Below are positions 1 to 35,525 of a stretch of 36,034 nt of DNA, in pieces. The DNA comes from Octopus bimaculoides (lineage: Eukaryota). Position 1 is the first letter of the stretch; every line of letters starts with the position of its first letter. The stretch spans positions 76,134,682-76,170,715 of the forward strand of contig NC_068991.1 of the NCBI RefSeq assembly GCF_001194135.2, written 5' to 3'. The notes beneath the pieces were generated by a model. It was not told the origin of the DNA and did no database searches. It saw only the letters and a program-made list of their open reading frames with translations. Both the position numbers and the translations under genes were made by a program.

Positions 1-246
1 TATATATGTATATATATATATATATATGTGTGTGTTTGTGTGTCTGTGTTTGTCCCCCCAACATCGCTTGACAACCGATGCTGGTGTGTTTATGTCCCCC
101 GTAACTTAGCGGTTCGGCAAAAGAGACTGTTAGAATAAGTACTAGGCTTCCAAAGAATAAGTCCTGGGGTCGATTTGCTCGACTAAAGGCGGTGCTCCAG
201 CATGGCCACAGTCAAAAGACTGAAACAAGTAAAAGAGTAAAAGAGT
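1..246 (+). mobile_element. tRNA-derived SINE, family A, 3' body and tail (head lies outside the window)
   Basis: Closely matches 31280-31468 (+) and 6297-6520 (-): gtttgtccccc..cgcttgacaaccgatg..gtaacttagcggttcggcaa..gaataagtactaggctt..gtcgatttgctcgactaaaggcggtgctccagcatggcc. Ends in an (A)AAAGAGT-repeat tail. Confidence 0.9.
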
Positions 247-721
247 ATATATATATATATATATATATATATAATGGATGACTGATTAGTAACAAGTAAA
301 ATCGATCCCAACAAATTTGGAATGTAGAGCAACAAATTCTAAATATTCTAAGCGATCTTTGTTAAAATATAATTGTTATTTCTTTGAGCTTCGCAATGCC
401 AATAAAGCTACATAATTACCCAAAGACATACTTATATCAAATGAATTCCCAACTGCGATTATGATCGAATGGAACTAATCGTCGTTCGCTTATGTACTGA
501 GATATACATTTCTTCTACTAAAAAAATGTTTATGACCCGTCTCTATCTACTTGTGAAAGAACTTAGTGTTTCAGTGTGTTCTTTTTTTTTTATTTCTCAT
601 ATATGAAATTACAGGCACAGCAGGGGAGACATGAATATAGCTTCTTAAAAGAGACATCATAAGGAAGGAGATCAATAGCGGCTCAATAAATAACAGGCTG
701 GATTAGAATCTTTGCAATACA

Positions 722-1386: not shown

Positions 1387-3179
1387 TTACAGGAAGAAAT
1401 ATGGCATAATTGCATACAACTTATGCAATTATGGAAACAGGCAAATCGATTCCAGGTCAATTAAATATGATTTTGTTCCTATAACAAAAAAGTCACTTTT
1501 AACCGCAAAACTCAAACATGTATATCATGAAAACGTTTTCTATACAAATGGCTCGAAGTAACATGCGACTCCTTATTTTTCCTTGTTCCGTCCCATCTTT
1601 ATCATTTTTATTATATGTTTATATATATGATAGATGCTAAACGCACCTTAAAAATATGTATACCACTATAGTTTCAGTTGAAATGTGATATAAATCATTT
1701 ATTCTGTAAACGCGTCTCGTTCTAATCTTGTTTTCCATACATATAAACACAGAATAAAATTAGTCGGTGAAAAGAATATCGTCACAACAATTGCTGTAAA
1801 GCGTGAGAGTCAAAGCTGAGGCTGATAGCGATCGATGGCCAAAGCTTCGCTAGGGAAAACCTGCAATGATGCAAATATATCAATTGTCTATATCTACAGA
1901 ATATATTAAGTAAAAAACGTAACAATTTCAACGACCTTGCATCTAGCTTCCCAGTCTTAACCAGAAGTGAAGACATAGACAAAAATGAAGGCATAGACGA
2001 CCAGATTAGAATTTAGGAATTCAAACGCTGGAGATCGGGCTATATTGTATCACCAACAGAGAAGAGGTAGTTCAGTCATATACTACTATTCTCGCACGCT
2101 ATGAAAAAAGATCATATTTTGTGATATACAAATAGAGAGAGTAATCCGAATAATCAACTTTTCAAAGACAACCAGGAATAGAAGTACGGACTGATCAATC
2201 CAACAATCCCGAGAATTTATGCAAATTATTTGAAACATTTCCTCTAAATATTAAGATCCGGAAAAAAAGACGACTGGGAGTTAAAAATTGTAAACAGAAA
2301 CAAAAATCACTATACAAATAAATTGCTTGTAAATTGTCATAAACAATTCAGACACCGCGAGGTACTGCGCACATATTTGAAATTTCTTTCAATAGAATAG
2401 CGAAGTTAAAACCCAACCAAAACACTGCGCCTACCCAAACTGAACAGAGCTGTGATCACTTGTGCAGTTGAAGGATGCAATAGACGTAGGACTTCTGAAA
2501 AATAATTATAGTAACTAACGTTTTGCGTGATATATTTTGTAATGGATAAACTCTTGCCAGTTAGATCAAAACTTTTCAATGACTGGTTAATATATTATTA
2601 TAATAGAGAAACGTTTGCGTGTGATATAACTAAAGATTTTGCGTGATAACTCTTTCGTAAACTTCAACAAGATGATTAGAAATCAACGTAATTTCCTCCC
2701 TTCAAAACATTAACCTTTTATTATTTTCATTTTACTGATATTTCTTCGAAACATGATTTCTTACGAAACCGTCCATGGAACAACCTTGCTTTCTCTATGA
2801 ATACAGTATATCAAGTATTAATGGAATATGCAACATATTACGTTGAGTATTTCCAAGGCAATGGAAAACACTGCAAAAACGAAATGATGCATCGCATGTA
2901 CTCTAGTCGTTTTTTACAGTGAAAGGACAATACGATGTGAAAATAATACTATAAGCAAAATATTAATAACAATAACAATATCAATAATGATAACAATAAT
3001 AATAACTGTAAGAAGAAATAGGATAGGAAGAATAAGAAGAATCTGGCTAGGCTAAGTTAAGCATGCAACAATGTATTGCAGACGGGCCAAATAAGACGTA
3101 TATAGTGACATGCAATGCAGTGTTGGGGAAAAGACGTTTCAAATATACAGGGGAGGATAAGTAAATTAAATATAGCTTC

Positions 3180-3300
3180 TTTTCAGTCGTATTGCGTGAC
3201 ATCTTGAGCAAGTGTCTTCGAATCGACCAATGCTTTGTGAGTAGATCTTGTAACCGAAAATAAAAAGAAACAGATTGTGTATGTATATCTCTGTGTGTAT
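3180..3300 (+). mobile_element. Degraded family A SINE fragment (post-head region)
   Basis: tgcgtgacatcttgagcaagtgtcttc..cgaccaatgctttgtgagtagat..aaaaagaa aligns with tgcgtggcaccttgggtaagtgcc..caaccaaagtcttgtgagtggat..gaaagaag at 31139-31227. Confidence 0.65.
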
Positions 3301-3463
3301 ATTCATAAAAATACTACAGTTATCCGAACTTTGGTCAGAATTTACTTTTGGTTGGCTACACTGCCTTCAGCCCTTGCATGCTAAGGTACAGTACTCGAAT
3401 TGTATCGTAATCAAGGTTTGACCTTGATCGCTCCATTTTGCTTGCTTGTGCTACGGAGTAAAC

Positions 3464-4718
3464 ATGGCCGCTCCGCTGGCCATTTCTACGAAGGAAGAAC
3501 GGAAATTCGTGATCCGACTTCTCGGGTCTGAAGATGTGTCAGGGATCTAATTTATCACAAGCTTTCAGAACAATATCGGGACGGCACTCTACTGGAGAGA
3601 AATGTGTATGAGTGGATGGAGAAGTTTAAATGTAGCCGGACAAGTGTGAATCACGAAGAGGGAGTAGGACGCCATCGACATACATTATTGACGTCAAGAT
3701 GCATCAAGCTTGAAAGATGGTCCTGGCGAACCGACGAAAGACCATCGATAACGTGGCTTGTTGTCTGAAAATTAACCATTTTTCTTATTTCTTTATTGCC
3801 CACAAGAGGCTAAACATAGAGGGGACAAACAAAGTGATTAAGTCGATTACATCGACCCCAGTGCATATGTGGTACTCAATTTATCGACTCTGAAAGGATG
3901 AGAGGTTAAGTCGATCTCGGCGGAATTTGAACTCACAATATAAAGACAGACGAAATACTGCTAAGCATTTCACCCGGTGTGCTAACGTTTCTGCCATCTC
4001 GTCGCCGTCTGAAAATTAAGCATGTATCTGCGTACGAAATCATCCACGACAAGCTTTGGTTGTGTGTGCGAGATGTGTGCCAAAGTAACTTACCGGAGTT
4101 CATAGGCGCAATTGTGTGGAGAGTTGTCAACGCTACTCGACTGCTACGACAATGAAATCAAAGATTTTTGGAGAGAATAGTCACAAGAGGTGAGATCCGG
4201 GTCCCTCATTTTCATTCAGAATGCAAATGGCAGAATATGGAGAGGAGTCACCAACGAAAAAGAAATTCACCAATCAACAGTTTTTGGTGACGCAAAAGGG
4301 CCTATACTGGAAGATTACCTGAAAACGGGTTCTACAGTCACTAGTTTAGGCTGTAGTAAAATGCTGCTGACGAACTGGAACCTGCAATTTCCACAAAGTT
4401 TTGAGGTCTGTTGTTAGAGCAAGTGTTATTCTTACACGACAATGCACGCCTACGCACGGCTGCCCACACCGTTGAAACCATTGATAAATTGAGCTTCAAT
4501 TTACTGGAACACACTTCGTACACTCTAGATTTTATTCCTTCCGATAATCAATTATACATTATGAAGTCGTTGATTTTATACGGCAACGAATCGCAGGAAG
4601 CACTGCGTAAATGGCAGTGCGACCAGCCGTAAGCTTTCCTCGCCGATGCAATACGTAAGATTCCATCTGAAAAGAAACGTATCGCAAAACAAGAAGAGTA
4701 TGTCAAAAGGCGATGTAA
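3464..4718 (+). pseudogene. Mariner (DD34D-type) transposase pseudogene
   Basis: Translation across frameshifts and stops: MAAPLAISTKEERKFVIRLLGSEDVSG..IYHKLSEQYRDGTLLERNVYEWMEKFKCSRTSVNHEEGVGR..KMVLANRRKTIDNVACCLKI[SINE]HVSAYEIIHDKL..RFLERIVTRGE..TVFGDAKGPILEDYLKTGSTVTS..VLFLHDNARLRTAAHTVETIDKLSFNLLEHTSYTLDFIPSD..QEALRKW..EEYVK. HDNAR and the YSPDLAPSD-like motif are mariner hallmarks. Confidence 0.93.
3780..4006 (-). mobile_element. Full-length tRNA-derived SINE, family B, inserted in the mariner with a 17-bp TSD
   Basis: On the minus strand the head is ggcgacgagatggcagaaacgttagc, the B-box is gagttcaaattcc and the tail is A-rich (gggcaataaagaaataagaaaa). Flanks are gtctgaaaattaaccat (3763-3779) and gtctgaaaattaagcat (4007-4023). 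Confidence 0.93.
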
Positions 4719-6296
4719 CCGTTCAACTTCTGTTTTTACTTTTATAATTTATAGATAAAAAATGCGTATATACGCGTGTATGACTTTGCGCTTTTGACTA
4801 ACCTCACACCCCGTCCATCGCTTATCTGGCGTAGGTTAATTTAGGTCCGGCATCTTAGCGTTTCGGTAAAGTAAAACACTGGAACAAGCAACTGACTTTA
4901 TGAAAAAAAAAGAGCTGGTTTGGATTTCTTCGACCTAAAACCTTCAATGTTGTGATCCAAGCATGGCTGCTGTTCAATGAGTGAAACGAGTGAAATATAA
5001 AAGACTGATCGATAAAAAAAAAATAAGCAAACACAAAAGAAAGACGATTCATCATCGTTACTCACAGTTAGACGCTGCCACTGAGAATTGATCAGGTCAC
5101 CCATCAATCATTCCGCTCCGAATTACTCCAAAAATATGCTCTGAAAATGTTATCTCGTCACTGAGCAACTTTGTGGTCGAATGGGGGGATAAATATTACA
5201 ACGTGGCAGTGTGGGCTAGAGGCTTCATGGAAAGGAAAATGACGTTATTCGAAGGAAGGTTTGCATTTTCGAACTCAGAGATGAGAAACGTAAAGAGGAT
5301 ACTGGAGGCAGTCTAAAAAGCCAGCTTCAAAATATGGCTGAAGCGAGAAGACCAAAAATGTCTTAAAAGCCATAACATGCCGGCTGGGAAATAGCATCGC
5401 TTGGTGAGACTGGCTTCAGTATTCTTCCCGAGAAAGACACATGACGGACCTGCCGCAAGGGTGGAAGTCAATACATTCAAAAGACCCACTGACATTGCAC
5501 GGTTATATACATGTGTGTACGTGTTTGTCTGAGTCTGGGTGTCTCTCTATATAATATATATATATATATGTCTAGAAATATGTCTATATGGCTTTTGATT
5601 GAAAAGGCATGAGCTCTTTTGGTGAGGGGAGATGGAACAGTTTTGGCGACAATTAAATAGTGTCTATAATTCATGAACAGAAGAGAAAACTGTTAGATTT
5701 GCACTAAGTAACGTGAAAGTCTATTAGTTTAAGTGATTTGGTCAGTGACCGCGCAACAATGAAATAATTGAGTTAGATTTTTCCGCTTCCTAATCAGACA
5801 CATGATAACATTGTCATTAATTAATTACTTAGCACTTGTACAAGAAATACAATAATTCGTATTACGAAATTTATCAAAACAGTAATTGAACTACCTCGTT
5901 CTAAAAGTATTTATGCCAAACCAAAATGAATATAACGTTTATCTAATTGCTGTTTAATGAGATGTCCTTTCAATCTTTTAAACAATTTTCATAAAACTGA
6001 CATAATACAAGTTAATTAGTATACAAAGAATATCTAATATTTTACGAGAGTAGAAAGTTAACTTGAATACTTTAACACAATTTAAAACATACTTGAGGCA
6101 GGTTCTGCTCTTCATTGATCGGGTGTCAACAGAATAAATATCAGTAATGACCGGTCGTTTATTTAAACGTCTGAAGAAGTCAATTTAGGTTAATTACGTC
6201 ATGCTATACACACTACAGAAAATTAGGGGCTGCTTATGCCCTGACAGTCATATATTCTTTTATAGGAGTAGAATGGTGTATTAAGTGTCATTGCAG

Positions 6297-6555
6297 ATTA
6301 TTCTTTTATTCTTTTATTCTTTTATTCTGGAACGAGCTTAAGTCATTTGACTGCGGCCATGCTAGAGCAGTGCCTTCAAGGGTTTTAGTCGAAACAAATC
6401 GACGCCATGATTTGTTTTTAGCCTTGTACTTATTCTATCAGTTTCCTTTTGCCGAACCGCTAAGTTACGGGGACATAAACACATCAAAACCGGTTGTCAT
6501 GCGTTGATGCGGGGAACAAATACAGGCACAAAGACACTCACACATAGATAAACAC

Positions 6556-6592
<37 letters not shown>

Positions 6593-6927
6593 CACACACA
6601 CACACNNNNNNNNNNNNNNNNNNNNNNNNNNNNNNNNNNNNNNNNNNNNNNNNNNNNNNNNNNNNNNNNNNNNNNNNNNNNNNNNNNNNNNNNNNNNNNN
6701 NNNNNNNNNNNNNNNNNNNNNNNNNNNNNNNNNNNNNNNNNNNNNNNNNNNTACATACATACGACAGCCTTCTCACAGTTTCCGTTTACCAAATCCACTC
6801 ACAAGGCGTTGGTCGGCCTGAAGCTATAGTAGAAGACACTTGCCCAAGGTGCCGCACAGTGGAACTGAGCCTGGAACCATGTGGTTGAGAAGCAAGCTTC
6901 TTACCACACAGCCACGCCTGTGCCTAT
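6297..6927 (-). mobile_element. Full-length tRNA-derived SINE, family A, with internal (TG)n and a gap
   Basis: The minus-strand head aggcacaggcgtggctgtgtggtaagaagcttgcttctcaaccacatggttccaggctcagttcc has A/B-box-like motifs. The body matches 1-246 and 31071-31468, and the tail is (GAATAAAA)n. Confidence 0.93.
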
Positions 6928-7511
6928 CTTTGTATTTTGTTTGCTTGCTTCCGTTCGAAATACCATCCTACTCAACAGAGACAACTGTTGTGCATCGTAG
7001 ATCTCTCCATGCATGGAAGATTCTCCCGCGAGAACGAGGTATGAGCATCCATGTGTTCGGCCACCTGAACTACCGACTCTTTGAATTATTATGTAAATGG
7101 GTGAATATTCCACATATACGCGAACCTTTATTTTAATACTCAAGTACACTGAGTGCGAGTCAATATGAGAAGGATGGATATTTGAACTGCAGAAATATTC
7201 TCTCCCACGGGATTCCTGAAAGCTTATACTCACAAATTACACACATATATACACATACACACAGACGCACATGCACACAGACGCACATACACACATACGC
7301 ACATACACCCATATTCACAAATATCTTCATGTATCTACACATATATACTCGAGCAGAGATATACGTGCGTAGTCTCGTGTGTAAAATATATTGTAATATA
7401 CGTAAATAAAATCTTGTACATGAAAAATATAACGAATATGTACCCACGCTCACAAATTCACCTATACATACGCAGAAGGACAGAAATTTCGACGCAGGAG
7501 ATAAATCTATA

Positions 7512-7590
7512 CTCAGTCACTTGCGCGTTAATTTCACAAGCAGGCTACTCCTTTAATTGGATCAACTGGAACCCTCGTCGTCGTAACTGA
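7512..7590 (+). mobile_element. 3' fragment of SINE family C
   Basis: cacttgcgcgttaatttcacaagc..gatcaactggaaccctcgtcgtcgtaac aligns with the reverse complement of 34447-34485 (cacttgcacgttaatttcataaat). Confidence 0.7.
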
Positions 7591-8201
7591 AGTATATGTT
7601 CAGTGATATACTAAACGAGATCTATACTAGAAATCAACCACATCACACAGTGATGTATTCTACCACCTTCCGAAAACTTTCACTTGAAATAACTTATTAT
7701 ATAACATCTTACAATGAATAATGTCTATATGTAGTTTATTTCATGAAGGAAAAAAATTTGAAAATGAAGAAACATAAGAAAACTTATTAACGTTTGCAAT
7801 GCTCGTATTTACAGCTCTTCAATTCGCAAGAATTCCTTGGACGCTGTAATTACAATTTTTTTTTGTGTCTGGGAAACTTATATTGAGTAATAATTTTACC
7901 ATTCAGTGTATCTTTTGTGTAATACTTTCACGCAAACTTCTATTAATTTTCTTATAGTGTAAGAGGACTTACACATGCAATAGAAAGTTAGGATGTAATT
8001 CTTCGACAATTTTTTACTCGAAACTCTTTTACAACTCTCAAATTTTATTTATGGATATTTAAAGAAATTTGCGTTTCAAAATTATTCACAAAGTTTATGT
8101 CTACCTGTAAAGATGTGTGTGTGTGTATATATANNNNNNNNNNNNNNNNNNNNNNNNNNNNNNNNNNNNNNNNNNNNNNNNNNNNNNNNNNNNNNNNNNN
8201 N

Positions 8202-26640: not shown

Positions 26641-27104
26641 TATACATACAAACGTATATATTACACATATACGTATGCATGTGCCTACTGAAGGGATTCA
26701 CCCAGTTTTCTCTGGACGAAATACCGCAACCTACAAGCGTTAAAAGAAATGAACATCCACACATTACGAATGTGATATGTAAATTATGTTTACCCCGTTA
26801 GATTTGCTTCAGACTCAAATCTTAATTTTCTTTTCATTTACGTTACAATGTCGCACGTTAGCAAATACCTTTTATCCGTATATAGCTAAGACTAGCGATT
26901 TGAATTATTTTATGAAGTGACTCATCTATGTGGAATCAATGAGAGGAACTAATAGACAACTATCTATACCTATCGTTCTCGTGCATTTCTGTGGCAACTT
27001 GTTTCGCCTCGGTTGGCATTGTACTATCTTCTCTAGCATTCTACGTCTTCAAGGGATTTTTCCTAGACGAAATTATGCAGCTTATAAACATTTCATCAAA
27101 ACCA

Positions 27105-27478
27105 ATACATTAAGTACATTATTTACATTTGACGGATATTTGTCATCATCTTGTTTGTTGTTAACACGTTTCGTCTGATATACTCTCCAAACTTCTTCAG
27201 GTGTCCTGGAGAAATTTCGAGCCTGGGTTCTCATTTTTCAATGTTATTATTATTATGTTGTTGTTGTTGTTTTTTCTTCTTTCTTCAAATTTTCTTCCAT
27301 TTCTCGCCGAGTGTTTTCCGTATACCTAGGACAGAGAAGCTCATTATATGCATTCCAAGTTTACTCACGCAAATTCACAGGTAAAATATGTATTTAAAAA
27401 AAAAAATTATTATTCAGATCACTGCCCGGAATCGAACTTGGAATCTTGAGGTTAGTAGCACGCACTCTCAACCACTTT
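27105..27478 (-). mobile_element. tRNA-headed non-autonomous element with a Penelope-type hammerhead-like segment
   Basis: On the minus strand there is an A-box-like agtggttgagag (27465-27476) and a B-box agttcgattcc (27428-27438), followed by T11, a spacer, (AAC)n/(AAT)n and then the hammerhead-like motif at 27163-27205. Confidence 0.7.
27163..27205 (-). ncRNA. Minimal type-I hammerhead-ribozyme-like motif, probably inactive in this copy
   Basis: The minus strand reads GACAC CUGAAGA A GUUUG gagaguauau CAGAC GAAA CGU GUU: a CUGANGA core, a 5-bp stem II, GAAA and a palindromic ACGU. Position 17 is G and the stem I 3' arm is incomplete. Confidence 0.6.
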
Positions 27479-27479
27479 G

Positions 27480-28250
27480 TTCATGGACTTCTAGTCAGTC
27501 TTGTAGGCGTTCAGGTTGGCTAGCGCTTAGGATCCAGCAGTGTTGTATGATTCTTTACTTAGCTTTGGACCATATATTGACAGTTCTATCATGTTATGGT
27601 CTGAGTGAGTAGACGGTGATATGTTTATGTTGTGGATAAGTCCATATTGTTTGAGAAGCAGAGGTCTAGGATGTTTTTACTTCTGGTTGGGGAAAGTATG
27701 CTGCATGAACATCATTTTCGTGAGATCTACTAGAGATTCTGCCTGATTGCATTCTTTTCGTGTCAGTCCTGAGGTTATGACACCTTCAGGCCATCTAATG
27801 CTGGGGAAGTTGAAGTCACCCATCAGAAGTGCATTAAGGCATTAGTCTTGGTGTGTGAGTTCATCTTTTATCTTTGTAAGATATTCCTCAAACTTGCCAT
27901 CGTAGTTTGAGGCATTGGATGGGCAGTATAATGTGCATATTACCACGTCAATTTACTTAAGACGTACTATGAGTGTGTTGCAGACCGCATTCGAATGTGA
28001 CACCAGTGTCAGTGCTGTCACACCATGGCTGTACATTGCAACTCCACCGTGACTTCTCTTTTTTCTGTCTGTGCGGAACACAGTGTACATTGGTACGTGT
28101 ATCTCAGCGTCATGTATGTCTGCAGACAGATGAGTCTCTGTGAGTGCAATGCATACAGCTTGATTGCATGCAGAAAGTTCTCCCAAGCATGCTCTTGCTG
28201 TTGTTTTGCAAGAGGCCTCTAATATTCATCAGCAGAATTGGTGTCTTATT
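27480..28250 (-). pseudogene. APE-type endonuclease of a CR1-like LINE (5' part of ORF2); RT domain absent
   Basis: All APE motifs are present in order: LMNIRGL, ALTETHL, FRTDRKKRSHGGVAMY, TLYCP, LMGDFNFPSIRW (GDFN at 27809-27820), NILDLCFSNN (27646-27675) and SDHNMI (27587-27604). It has several stops and frameshifts. Confidence 0.95.
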
Positions 28251-28439
28251 TTATAGATTTGGCCTCACGAGTTCATAGGAGCGGCTGAGTTCTTTCTTTT
28301 TACGTTCTATCTGCGCCTTGGTGCTATTGAATCCATTGTTTTTCAGGGCTGCAGTAATCACATTATTGGGTGGGTCATTTTCGGTAGCAACCCAAGCCCG
28401 GAGGAGTTGGTCTATTTTTGTGTCCTTCCAGGTTGCCAT
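28251..28439 (-). CDS. Intact 62-aa Myb/SANT-like (trihelix/MADF-type) ORF in the ORF1 position of the LINE
   Basis: MATWKDTKIDQLLRAWVATENDPPNNVITAALKNNGFNSTKAQIERKKKELSRSYELVRPNL fits the W-x6-LL-x2-W..I-x3-L-x3-GF-x2-T-x2-QI-x2-K-x-K-x-L-x3-Y pattern. The start context is gagATGG. The domain call is by eye and expression is unknown. Confidence 0.65.
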   Translation of the reverse strand: MATWKDTKIDQLLRAWVATENDPPNNVITAALKNNGFNSTKAQIERKKKELSRSYELVRPNL

Positions 28440-28564
28440 CTCGACTGTGTTACAACTTCCTTTATGACGTGTGATTCATTGACGAGTGCAGAAAGAGGGA
28501 GAGAGGGGGTACGCGATAGAGATATCATGGGACATGGAGGAGTAGTTGATGGGAAAATGAGAAC

Positions 28565-28767
28565 AGAGTGGAGCAGAAGAGGGTGGGAGGGGTGTTAGAA
28601 GAGAAGATAGGAGTAGAGTCGAGCAGAAGAGTATAATAGGAGAGGGAGGGAGGTTAGGCGAGGAAAGCAAGGAGGACAAATTGACAGGAGAGAGGGGGTG
28701 CAGGGATTCTAGGCGAGGAAAGTGAGGAGAGCAAATTGATAGAAGAGAGGTGGGAACAGGGGTTCTA
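28565..28767. repeat. Purine-rich degenerate minisatellite (50-56 bp period), putative LINE 5' region
   Basis: taggcgaggaaag..ggag..caaattga..gagagg occurs at 28655 and 28710; gagcagaagag occurs at 28571 and 28621. Confidence 0.75.
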
Positions 28768-29065
28768 CAATCGCACGGAAAATTCATTCAAGAAAGTTTA
28801 GCTGATATAAACCTTTTTTTTGTTTTCAAATGTCCCACTGTATGGGACAAATTTACGTTAACAAGCTTCTAGCATCCAGTATCAATTGCTTAAAGGGTTT
28901 TCCCTTGTATTTATTATTTCTTTTCAAAAGCCGATTTGTGTATTTATATTTGTATATATGTGCTTCTCAATGTGAGTCTGTAAGAAAAATAAAGCTGAAA
29001 AGTTTTGAGTCGAGAATGTAAACAAAGCGATCGATTATCGGTATGTGGCGGTTTTTACTCTATAC

Positions 29066-29137
<72 letters not shown>

Positions 29138-31070: not shown

Positions 31071-31468
31071 AGGCGCAGGTGTGGCTGTTTGGTAAGTAGC
31101 TTGATTACCAACCACATGGTTCCGGTTTCAGTCCCTCTGCGTGGCACCTTGGGTAAGTGCCGTCTGCTATAGCCTCGGGCCAACCAAAGTCTTGTGAGTG
31201 GATTTGGATGTCGGAAACTGAAAGAAGCGCGTCGTATATACATGTATGTGTGTGTGTGTATGTATATGTTTGTGTCTGTGTTTGTCCCCCATCATCGCTT
31301 GACAACCGATGTTGGTGTGCTTACATCCCTGTAACTTAGCAGTTCAGCAATGGAGAACGATAGAATAAGTACTAGGCTTACAAATAAGAAGTCCTAGGGT
31401 CGATTTGGTCGACTAAAGGTGGTGCTCCACTATGGCCGCAGTCAAATCATGGAAGCAAATAAAAGAAT
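31071..31468 (+). mobile_element. Full-length tRNA-derived SINE, family A
   Basis: The head aggcgcaggtgtggctgtttggtaagtagcttgattaccaaccacatggttccggtttcagtccc is followed by internal (TG)n and a body and tail matching 1-246. Confidence 0.95.
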
Positions 31469-31554
31469 ATATATCCCTCCCTCTTACTCTCTTTCTTCCT
31501 CTCCCTCTCTCTCTCCCTCCCTCTCTCTAGGTTAATATTAGGTCCAATACTATC

Positions 31555-35460: not shown

Positions 35461-35525
35461 CACTGGCGGTGCCCCAGCATGGCCACAGCCTAAAAGCTGA
35501 ATCATATAAGGGAATACAAGAATAA
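35461..35525 (+). mobile_element. SINE 3' tail fragment
   Basis: ggcggtgccccagcatggccacag..ctgaa matches ggcggtgctccagcatggccacag..ctgaa at 188-224. Confidence 0.7.

What the first reader, a model, noticed from the sequence alone, without database searches (positions are those of the whole stretch)
27480..28787. Myb/SANT-like DNA-binding ORF in frame with a CR1-like LINE endonuclease
Seen: an intact 62-aa ORF (28439-28251, minus) with trihelix/Myb-SANT-like spacing ends in TAA, and the same frame continues NKTPILLMNIRGLL, the start of a complete APE domain. Established: CR1/L2-group ORF1s usually carry PHD, RRM/zinc-knuckle or esterase modules, while Myb domains are known mainly from R2- and TRAS/SART-type elements and Harbinger accessory proteins. 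Inference: this is either an unusual ORF1 made of a single Myb domain, or a Myb-APE fusion (or readthrough arrangement) that could tether the endonuclease to a DNA motif. I do not know of this architecture in CR1-like elements.
Basis: partly seen in the sequence, partly recalled or inferred. Interest (0 to 1): 0.8.

Follow-up and report, generated by a model that had tools for sequence, protein, structure and literature searches.

The report
Dead, internally deleted octopus LINE copy
The small "Myb-like" reading frame that runs straight into a LINE endonuclease is a one-off internal deletion in a dead jumping-gene copy, not a fusion protein, though it exposes a LINE family whose first gene has a domain make-up not found in the literature searched here.

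Summary
The 62-aa ORF (28439-28251, minus), its TAA and the in-frame NKTPILLMNIRGLL are all present. The APE behind it is a pseudogene with at least 3 frameshifts and 2 stops, and no RT follows. The two halves do belong to one LINE lineage. Loci L010, L005 and L007 show the order: CT-rich leader, ORF1 (N-terminal three-helix domain, linker, CCCH zinc finger, conserved tail), APE, RT. The window's copy lacks about 630 nt, namely the rest of ORF1 and the first ~10 ORF2 codons, and the break shares a ~7-nt microhomology. It is also cut off after the APE. The junction is unique. In three individuals only the locus's own contig spans it, while other copies diverge at 28242-28244 or 28254/5. The TAA and the shared frame are copy-specific. 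The Myb/SANT call is consistent but sub-threshold: Pfam gives 19.6 bits against a cut-off of 27, 8 of 18 relatives match weakly, and the model's best TM matches are SANT/Myb with non-significant E-values. The interesting part is at family level. The ORF1 architecture was not found in the searched literature, and the two intact copies have a −1-frame ORF2 overlap with a slippery heptamer.

The parts
28440..28940 (-). CT-rich 5' leader (5' UTR) of the LINE copy. It contains a spurious 103-aa ORF at 28787-28476.
   Evidence: Aligns to L007 43-499 at 73% and to L001 at 68%, with many gaps. Other genomic copies span 28887-28255. Similar CT-rich leaders precede ORF1 in L005 and L010. The 103-aa ORF has no Pfam hit.
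28251..28439 (-). Remnant of ORF1: its first 62 codons (the N-terminal three-helix, Myb/SANT-like domain) plus a copy-specific TAA.
   Evidence: Homologues. Pfam Myb_DNA-bind_4 at 19.6 bits, below the cut-off of 27. AF2 model at pLDDT 83 with three helices. Foldseek top TM matches are SANT/Myb with non-significant E-values. dN/dS is 0.23-0.71 against other copies.
28238..28244 (-). Internal deletion junction with about 7 nt of microhomology, A(C/T)ACCAA. ORF1 codon ~67 is joined to ORF2 codon ~11, and about 630 nt are missing.
   Evidence: Junction alignment A2. L007 43-671 matches 28910-28268 and L007 1320-1482 matches 28240-28072. Only the locus's own contig spans 28248-28251.
27590..28244 (-). 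ORF2 N-terminus and APE endonuclease pseudogene.
   Evidence: Exo_endo_phos_2 at E=4.7e-11 on a read-through. 78% nt identity to L002 410-1189. 57% aa identity to the intact L011 ORF2. At least 3 frameshifts and 2 stops.
27478..27589 (-). Remnant of the APE-RT linker, ending at the 3' break of the LINE copy. No RT follows.
   Evidence: Homology to L002 ends at 27475, whereas L002 continues into RT motifs. tblastn with RT queries finds nothing further in the window.
27300..27477 (-). Piece of a high-copy tRNA-like SINE-type repeat abutting the LINE break. Not part of the LINE.
   Evidence: The sequence contains ...AGTTCGATTCCGGGCAGTGA. Read depth jumps from about 40 to 550-1250 at ~0.7x sampling. 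No Rfam hit.
27071..27283 (.). A second, very high-copy repeat downstream. Not part of the LINE.
   Evidence: Depth is 1,400-8,100 at ~0.7x sampling. It partly matches L006 2709-2846.

Best explanation
The region is one dead, rearranged copy of an octopus non-LTR retrotransposon (LINE) on the minus strand. Intact relatives are built as follows: a CT-rich 5' leader; ORF1 of about 290-370 aa; then ORF2 (APE endonuclease plus reverse transcriptase) overlapping the ORF1 end in the −1 frame; then a 3' hairpin-like tail ending in a (TA)n-type microsatellite. ORF1 consists of an N-terminal three-helix Myb/SANT-like domain, a charged linker, one CCCH zinc finger and a conserved ...YADAV...AAEQxxFLxMAQRIV tail. 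The window's copy keeps the leader and ORF1 codons 1 to about 66. It then jumps, across a ~7-nt microhomology, to about codon 11 of ORF2, losing about 630 nt. It runs through a decayed APE and stops in the APE-RT linker, where a SINE-type repeat begins. The TAA and the common reading frame of the two halves come from copy-specific point changes and a 1-nt deletion. The locus therefore encodes nothing functional. Shown here: the homology, the deletion, the uniqueness of the junction, and the decay. Inferred: whether the deletion arose by microhomology-mediated repair after insertion or by template jumping of the reverse transcriptase during insertion; and that ORF1's domains bind nucleic acid in active elements.
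For: The two halves are linked in other copies. L007 carries the ORF at 500-685 and the first APE motif at about 1400, and it aligns to both window halves. L010 (O. sinensis) and L005 (O. vulgaris) show N-terminal domain, CCCH/tail, APE and RT in that order. L011 and L012 have intact ORF1 followed by a −1-frame ORF2. Junction uniqueness: read depth dips to single copy at 28248-28262. Other APE copies continue upstream as ATGGCCACCATTGCCGCC...|ACACCAATT, and other ORF copies continue as ...DKLDIIFNF*. Microhomology. Decay and silence: at least 3 frameshifts and 2 stops, and no RNA reads in two transcriptome runs. Past function of the ORF domain: the ORF is 80-82% identical without gaps while the leader is 68-73% identical with gaps, and dN/dS is 0.23-0.71. 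Other internally deleted copies exist (L006, L009), so such deletions are common in this lineage.
Against: No undeleted copy of exactly the window's subfamily from the same genome could be read base by base. L007, L001 and L002 are Logan contigs from unnamed samples, only 69-78% identical at the nucleotide level. The one organism-A contig that touches both halves (joint 28220->28283) could not be inspected. It is probably an undeleted copy (loose end of at least 255 nt) but might be a second, further-deleted copy. The cause of the 3' break at about 27478 is unknown.
Confidence: 0.85

Rival explanations
1. A genuine Myb-APE fusion or stop-codon read-through architecture that is typical of this LINE family.
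For: The ORF and the APE start share a frame across one TAA. In the intact relatives ORF2 has no ATG of its own before the APE, so some ORF1-ORF2 coupling is plausible.
Against: The junction is unique to this locus. Relatives have about 630-700 nt of ORF1 body between the two parts. The TAA is absent from other copies. The shared frame lasts about 20 codons before the first frameshift.
Confidence: 0.02
2. Chance juxtaposition of two unrelated repeats, with the Myb-like ORF belonging to a different element or gene and the LINE fragment merely landing next to it. This was my own interim reading.
For: There is a copy-number step at about 28207-28244. L001 carries the ORF with no recognisable APE within 350 nt downstream. 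L002 carries the APE with no ORF upstream.
Against: L007, L010 and L005 carry both parts in one element in the expected order. L002 is simply 5'-truncated inside the ORF1 tail (one search compared). L001 holds a decayed CCCH region and ends before the APE.
Confidence: 0.03
3. The same dead LINE copy, but the internal deletion, and possibly the join to the SINE at the 3' side, arose during retrotransposition by reverse-transcriptase template jumping rather than by a later genomic deletion.
For: There are ~7 nt of microhomology at the junction. Other copies in this lineage also carry internal deletions joining 5' ORF1 to distant 3' parts (L006, L009). The fragment abuts a 5'-truncated SINE-type repeat on its 3' side.
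Against: Microhomology is equally expected from microhomology-mediated end joining after insertion. No target-site duplication or intact 3' end is available to define a single insertion event.
Confidence: 0.35
4. The N-terminal ORF1 domain is not a Myb/SANT homologue but an unrelated small three-helix bundle, for example a protein- or RNA-binding module.
For: All Pfam matches are below threshold. The family profile finds no Myb/SANT chain in PDB sequences. All Foldseek E-values are above 1. The third conserved aromatic residue of Myb repeats is replaced by K/R in the ...QIERKKxEF... helix.
Against: Myb_DNA-bind_4 is the only Pfam family that recurs, in 8 of 18 members. The matches cover the whole domain in register (profile positions 3-69). 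The highest TM scores (0.64-0.74) are all to SANT, MYB or trihelix domains.
Confidence: 0.4

Closest known systems
CR1/L2-type (Jockey-superfamily) LINEs with an ORF1 upstream of an APE-RT ORF2
   Same: It has a 5' leader, an ORF1, an ORF2 with Exo_endo_phos_2 and RVT_1, a C-terminal ...LYSLERRRERY..IYIWKILEG motif (the resemblance to CR1/L2 is from my memory), and a 3' end with a hairpin-like tail plus short tandem repeats instead of poly(A). A SINE in the same window shares the tail.
   Different: The ORF1 content differs. The survey of Jockey-superfamily ORF1s lists RRM, CCHC, PHD, esterase, coiled coil, CTD and zf/lz modules, and mentions no Myb, SANT or CCCH (PMC4120745). Pfam finds none of those modules in P0024 or P0017.
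Myb domains of site-specific non-LTR elements (R2; TRAS/SART) and the Myb/SANT accessory protein of Harbinger transposons
   Same: Each is a small three-helix Myb/SANT-type module carried by a mobile element (from established knowledge). Here the fold model superposes best on SANT, MYB and trihelix structures.
   Different: In R2 and TRAS/SART the Myb module lies inside the RT-bearing protein. Here it is at the N-terminus of ORF1, next to a CCCH finger. No sequence-level membership in any Pfam Myb family is reached. No Harbinger-like transposase lies nearby.
Internally deleted or rearranged dead LINE copies
   Same: It is a truncated, frameshifted copy with a microhomology junction, and other deleted copies exist in the same lineage (L006, L009).
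   Different: Nothing unusual. The deletion happens to bring two coding pieces into one frame.
Retroviral gag-pol style −1 programmed frameshifting
   Same: In the intact copies ORF2 overlaps ORF1 in the −1 frame by 178-277 nt and has no ATG before the APE. U_UUU_UUA or U_UUU_UUG sits in the ORF1 frame at a homologous conserved position.
   Different: No unusually stable downstream structure was predicted (z-scores 0.0 and −0.5). Only two intact copies are available, and there is no experimental evidence.

Membership tests
APE-type non-LTR retrotransposon (LINE) | An apurinic/apyrimidinic-like endonuclease followed by a reverse transcriptase in one ORF | tested here: met
   Window read-through: Exo_endo_phos_2 at E=4.7e-11. 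Relatives L005 and L010 have APE then RVT_1 at E=5.5e-30. Best PDB sequence matches are LINE-1 ORF2p and R2. The window copy itself lacks the RT.
CR1/L2 group of LINEs | 3' end without poly(A), ending in a conserved tail plus short tandem repeats | tested here: met
   L005a shares the conserved tail before an assembly gap. L005b, L010, L006 and L009 end ...GGTGCCCCAGCATGGCCrCAGC..GCTGAAAC followed by (TA)n or (TAYA)n. The window copy lacks its 3' end.
CR1/L2 group of LINEs | RT-domain phylogenetic placement among reference clades | not tested
The clade label rests on tail style and on a remembered C-terminal motif.
Known LINE ORF1 types (RRM/CCHC, L1-type coiled coil-RRM-CTD, PHD, esterase) | Presence of at least one of those modules in ORF1 | tested here: not met
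   Pfam scans of P0024, P0017, P0008 and others show none of them. The only hits are a sub-threshold zf-CCCH_PARP12 (20.2 bits) and Myb_DNA-bind_4.
Myb/SANT-like DNA-binding domain (Pfam Myb_DNA-bind_4, PF13837) | Score at or above the family's gathering threshold (27 bits) | tested here: not met
   The window ORF scores 19.6 bits, E=1.2e-3. Eight of 18 family members match, best E=9e-4, all below threshold. No hit to MADF or other Myb_DNA-bind models appeared at E<=10.
Myb/SANT-like DNA-binding domain | Three-helix bundle superposable on solved Myb/SANT domains | tested here: inconclusive
   The AF2 model has pLDDT 83 with helices at 6-18, 25-34 and 41-61. The top TM scores are DMAP1 SANT 0.73-0.74, RAD MYB 0.70, PHR1 0.67 and GT-1 0.66, but all Foldseek E-values exceed 1.
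Myb/SANT-like DNA-binding domain | Three regularly spaced conserved aromatic residues, one per helix | tested here: inconclusive
   W4 and W16 are conserved in most members. The third-helix position is K/R (..QIERKKxEFxRSY..), with only Y55 nearby.
Myb/SANT-like DNA-binding domain | Sequence-specific DNA binding | not testable with these tools
   Needs an EMSA or similar assay with the recombinant domain.
Programmed −1 ribosomal frameshift (gag-pol type) | Overlapping −1 ORF, slippery X_XXY_YYZ in the zero frame, and a downstream stimulatory structure | tested here: inconclusive
   The overlap and the heptamer are met in L011 and L012. The downstream fold is not more stable than shuffles. Pseudoknots were not assessed.

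The most novel reading that the evidence does not exclude
Active members of this octopus LINE lineage express ORF2 only as an ORF1-ORF2 fusion, by −1 frameshifting at the conserved U_UUU_UUR site. A Myb/SANT-like DNA-binding module and a CCCH finger would then sit on the same polypeptide as the endonuclease and reverse transcriptase and could steer where the element, and the abundant SINE that shares its tail, inserts.
Probability: 0.15. Interest if true: 0.65.

Novelty: new variant of a known kind. Interest (0 to 1): 0.38.

Why it matters
At this locus nothing functional is encoded, so the specific claim of a Myb-endonuclease fusion should be dropped. Following it up showed that octopus genomes hold a CR1/L2-style LINE lineage with an unusual ORF1. 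That ORF1 combines a small three-helix, Myb/SANT-like domain with a CCCH zinc finger and a conserved tail. This combination is absent from the published ORF1 classifications I could search. The lineage also shows a possible −1 frameshift link to ORF2 and a 3' tail shared with a SINE in the same window. ORF1 proteins decide how LINE RNA is packaged and delivered. A new ORF1 type in a clade whose SINE partner has greatly expanded in cephalopods would therefore be useful to people annotating cephalopod repeats and studying LINE/SINE partnership. It is a modest, family-level point, not a discovery at this locus.

Tried and rejected
1. Interim hypothesis of two unrelated repeats. It rested on the copy-number step, on L001 lacking an APE and on L002 lacking the ORF. 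I rejected it after L005, L010 and L007 showed both parts in one element.
2. Looking for the rest of L001, or for the missing RT, elsewhere in the window found nothing.
4. PDB sequence searches with the ORF alone and with the 18-sequence profile found no Myb/SANT chain, only non-significant UgpB, UBE2L3 and ribosomal S8 matches.
5. The AF2 model from 2 sequences was too weak (pLDDT 61). It was redone with 18 sequences.
6. The word-indexed homology search with the full ORF1 alignment added only two octopus proteins.
7. An Rfam scan of 26900-29100 found nothing.
8. Downstream RNA structure at the slippery sites is not better than shuffles.
9. Clade placement by Pfam or PDB is not possible.
10. 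The contig joining 28220 to 28283 could not be read directly.

Full report
OBSERVATION. On the minus strand an ATG at 28439 opens a 62-codon ORF (MATWKDTKIDQLLRAWVATENDPPNNVITAALKNNGFNSTKAQIERKKKELSRSYELVRPNL) that ends in TAA at 28253-28251. The same frame then reads NKTPILLMNIRGLL. The endonuclease behind it is not intact. The shared frame lasts about 20 codons. Reading the APE against intact relatives needs frameshifts near 28188, 27700 and 27640 and crosses stops at 27955 and 27844, although the LTETH, GDFN and SDHN motifs are recognisable. A read-through translation hits Pfam Exo_endo_phos_2 at E=4.7e-11. No reverse transcriptase follows. LINE homology ends at about 27478, where a tRNA-like SINE-type repeat begins. 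The 103-aa ORF at 28787-28476 is just a translation of a CT-rich leader.

FIRST IMPRESSION, LATER OVERTURNED. Raw genomic reads sampled at about 0.7x and Logan contigs showed a copy-number step. The APE part is repeated, with about 12-16 copies at 28185-28236 and a 45-bp motif at about 1000 copies. The ORF part has about 5-17 copies. Depth falls to single copy at 28248-28262. The only close protein relative of the ORF (P0001, 71% identity) lies on a 946-bp contig, L001. Its DNA matches the window from 28777 to 28238 and then continues without an APE. The closest APE relative (L002) matches only 28244-27475 and has no ORF upstream. This looked like two unrelated repeats joined by chance.

WHAT REVERSED IT. 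A full HMMER search with the two-sequence profile found 22 representatives, 8 of them at E<=1e-10. Most are uncharacterised proteins of Octopus vulgaris and O. sinensis. The longer ones share one architecture: the ~70-aa N-terminal domain, a charged linker, a CCCH finger (CKFFxxGxCxHGxxGxGCRFxHP) and a conserved ...YADAV...AAEQxxFLxMAQRIV tail. Genomic context settled the matter. In L005 (O. vulgaris) and L010 (O. sinensis) this ORF is preceded by a CT-rich leader and followed by APE and RT in one element of about 3.8 kb. L007 is the closest relative that has flanking sequence. Its positions 43-671 align to window 28910-28268 (75%) and its positions 1320-1482 align to window 28240-28072 (69%). 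Between them lie about 630 nt holding a decayed CCCH region and tail. L002 is simply 5'-truncated inside the ORF1 tail: its MDTNEIKPCRPTHKTTKTDRPRMATNAAESSV parallels L005's LDTSSSEPGALTTALKTTTIKGPRVATADTSPGA. Two other O. vulgaris copies (L006, L009) join the N-terminal domain directly to late RT sequence, so internal deletions are common in this lineage.

THE JUNCTION. Left-hand homology follows ORF1 (L001: CTGGATAAATTAGATACCAAC, reading LDKLDTN) down to about 28238. Right-hand homology (…GTC|ACACCAATTCTGCTG) starts at 28244. The two sides overlap in A(C/T)ACCAA, a microhomology of about 7 nt. Other ORF copies in the same genome leave the window at 28254/5 and read ...RPNL-DKLDIIFNF*. Other APE copies leave at 28242-28244 and read MATIAA(K/E)S.V|TPILLMNIRGL upstream. 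At 28248-28251 only the locus's own contig, with no differences and at single-copy depth, spans the junction in three individuals. The TAA and the shared frame result from substitutions plus a 1-nt deletion relative to L001. One contig touching both halves (28220->28283) has at least 255 nt of further ORF1-like sequence (...SYELVKPHL...). It is most simply an undeleted copy, but I could not read it. The junction is a one-off deletion, but the Myb-like segment is not from an unrelated element.

IS IT MYB/SANT? Pfam gives Myb_DNA-bind_4 at 19.6 bits against a cut-off of 27 for the window ORF, covering profile positions 3-69 of 89. Eight of 18 family members match the same model, all below threshold, and no other family recurs. 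A profile search of PDB sequences finds no Myb/SANT chain. An AlphaFold model built on the 18-sequence alignment has pLDDT 83 and three helices at 6-18, 25-34 and 41-61. Its highest TM scores are to DMAP1 SANT (0.73-0.74), RAD MYB (0.70), PHR1 MYB (0.67) and the GT-1 trihelix (0.66), yet every Foldseek E-value exceeds 1. W4 and W16 are conserved, but the third-helix aromatic is replaced by K/R. My judgement is that it is probably a divergent Myb/SANT-type three-helix domain (about 0.6), not established.

WAS THE DOMAIN EVER FUNCTIONAL? Between copies the ORF is 80-82% identical with no gaps, while the leader is 68-73% identical with many gaps. dN/dS is 0.23-0.71. ORF1 is intact at 371 and 289 aa in L011 and L012. 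This indicates a protein that was under selection in active elements. The window copy is dead, and two RNA-seq runs, of which about 6% each was read, put no reads on 27471-29000.

FAMILY-LEVEL EXTRAS. In both intact copies ORF2 is open in the −1 frame and overlaps ORF1 by 277 and 178 nt, with no ATG before the first APE motif. Both carry a canonical slippery heptamer in the ORF1 frame at the homologous ...AAEQxxF-L(D/E)MAQ position: U_UUU_UUG in L011 and U_UUU_UUA in L012. The decayed L010 and L005 switch from ORF1-frame to ORF2-frame peptide at or just after this point. Downstream folding is no better than shuffled sequence, so −1 frameshifting is a hypothesis only. All copies that reach the 3' end share GGTGCCCCAGCATGGCCrCAGC..GCTGAAAC; where sequence continues past it (L005a runs into a gap) it is followed by a (TA)n-type microsatellite and not poly(A). 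The same tail ends SINE copies at window 60-260 and 31300-31470, and a tail-only scrap lies at 35464-35501.

COMPARISON WITH WHAT IS KNOWN. ORF2 is a standard APE plus RVT_1 protein. The tail style and a C-terminal ...LYSLERRRERY..IYIWKILEG motif fit CR1/L2-type LINEs. The survey of Jockey-superfamily ORF1s (PMC4120745) lists RRM, CCHC, PHD, esterase, coiled coil, CTD and zf/lz modules and never mentions Myb, SANT or CCCH. Full-text searches combining ORF1 with Myb, CCCH and non-LTR or CR1 found nothing relevant. The main octopus LINE paper (PMC9115989) treats only RTE and Dong elements. Repbase and subscription journals could not be searched, so 'undescribed' means undescribed within the library available here.

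VERDICT. The window feature itself is ordinary: a dead, internally deleted, 3'-truncated LINE copy. The only novelty is at family level, in an ORF1 domain combination that appears undescribed and a possible frameshift link to ORF2. Interest is 0.38.

Noticed in passing
window 60-260 (+), 31300-31470 (+), 35464-35501 (+): Two SINE-like copies end with the same ~50-70-nt tail as this LINE lineage (...GGCGGTGCTCCAGCATGGCCACAGTCAAAAGACTGAAAC...(TA)n). A ~40-nt tail-only fragment sits at 35464-35501. This suggests a LINE/SINE partnership through a shared 3' tail.
   Followed up: partly
L011 nt 998 and L012 nt 732 (related loci): A canonical −1 slippery heptamer (U_UUU_UUG or U_UUU_UUA) lies in the ORF1 frame at a homologous conserved peptide, inside the ORF1/ORF2 overlap. 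ORF2 has no ATG before the APE. No unusually stable downstream structure was found.
   Followed up: partly
L001 nt ~599, L007 nt ~707, and same-genome copies past window 28255: The window's closest relatives all share an early stop (TTT TAA) near ORF1 codon 70-72, while more distant relatives read through. The subfamily's source copy may already have carried a truncated ORF1.
   Followed up: no
window 28133-28184: A ~45-bp stretch encoding the first APE motif (..AVCIALTETHL..) is present at about 1000 copies at >=80% identity, far more than the rest of the fragment. Most of those copies diverge immediately upstream into ...TCAGGAAAGAAATTTTGC.... This points to a much more abundant related LINE family sharing this motif.
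   Followed up: no
window 27071-27283 and 27300-27477: Two different high-copy repeats abut the LINE's 3' break. Depth at ~0.7x sampling is 1,400-8,100 for the first and 550-1,250 for the second. The second starts with a tRNA-like T-arm (AGTTCGATTCC) but has no Rfam hit.
   Followed up: partly
L006 10001-10882 and L009 8001-9486 (O. vulgaris): Two annotated 'hypothetical proteins' (CAI9729350, CAI9735850) are internally deleted copies of the same LINE lineage, with the ORF1 N-terminus joined to late RT sequence. They have been mis-modelled as multi-exon genes.
   Followed up: partly
L011 (ENA metagenome scaffold, GC 55%) and L012 (Logan SRR22824287): The only intact ORF1-ORF2 copies come from samples of unknown organism, one of them a metagenome with much higher GC than the octopus loci. 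The lineage may therefore be active outside Octopus.
   Followed up: no
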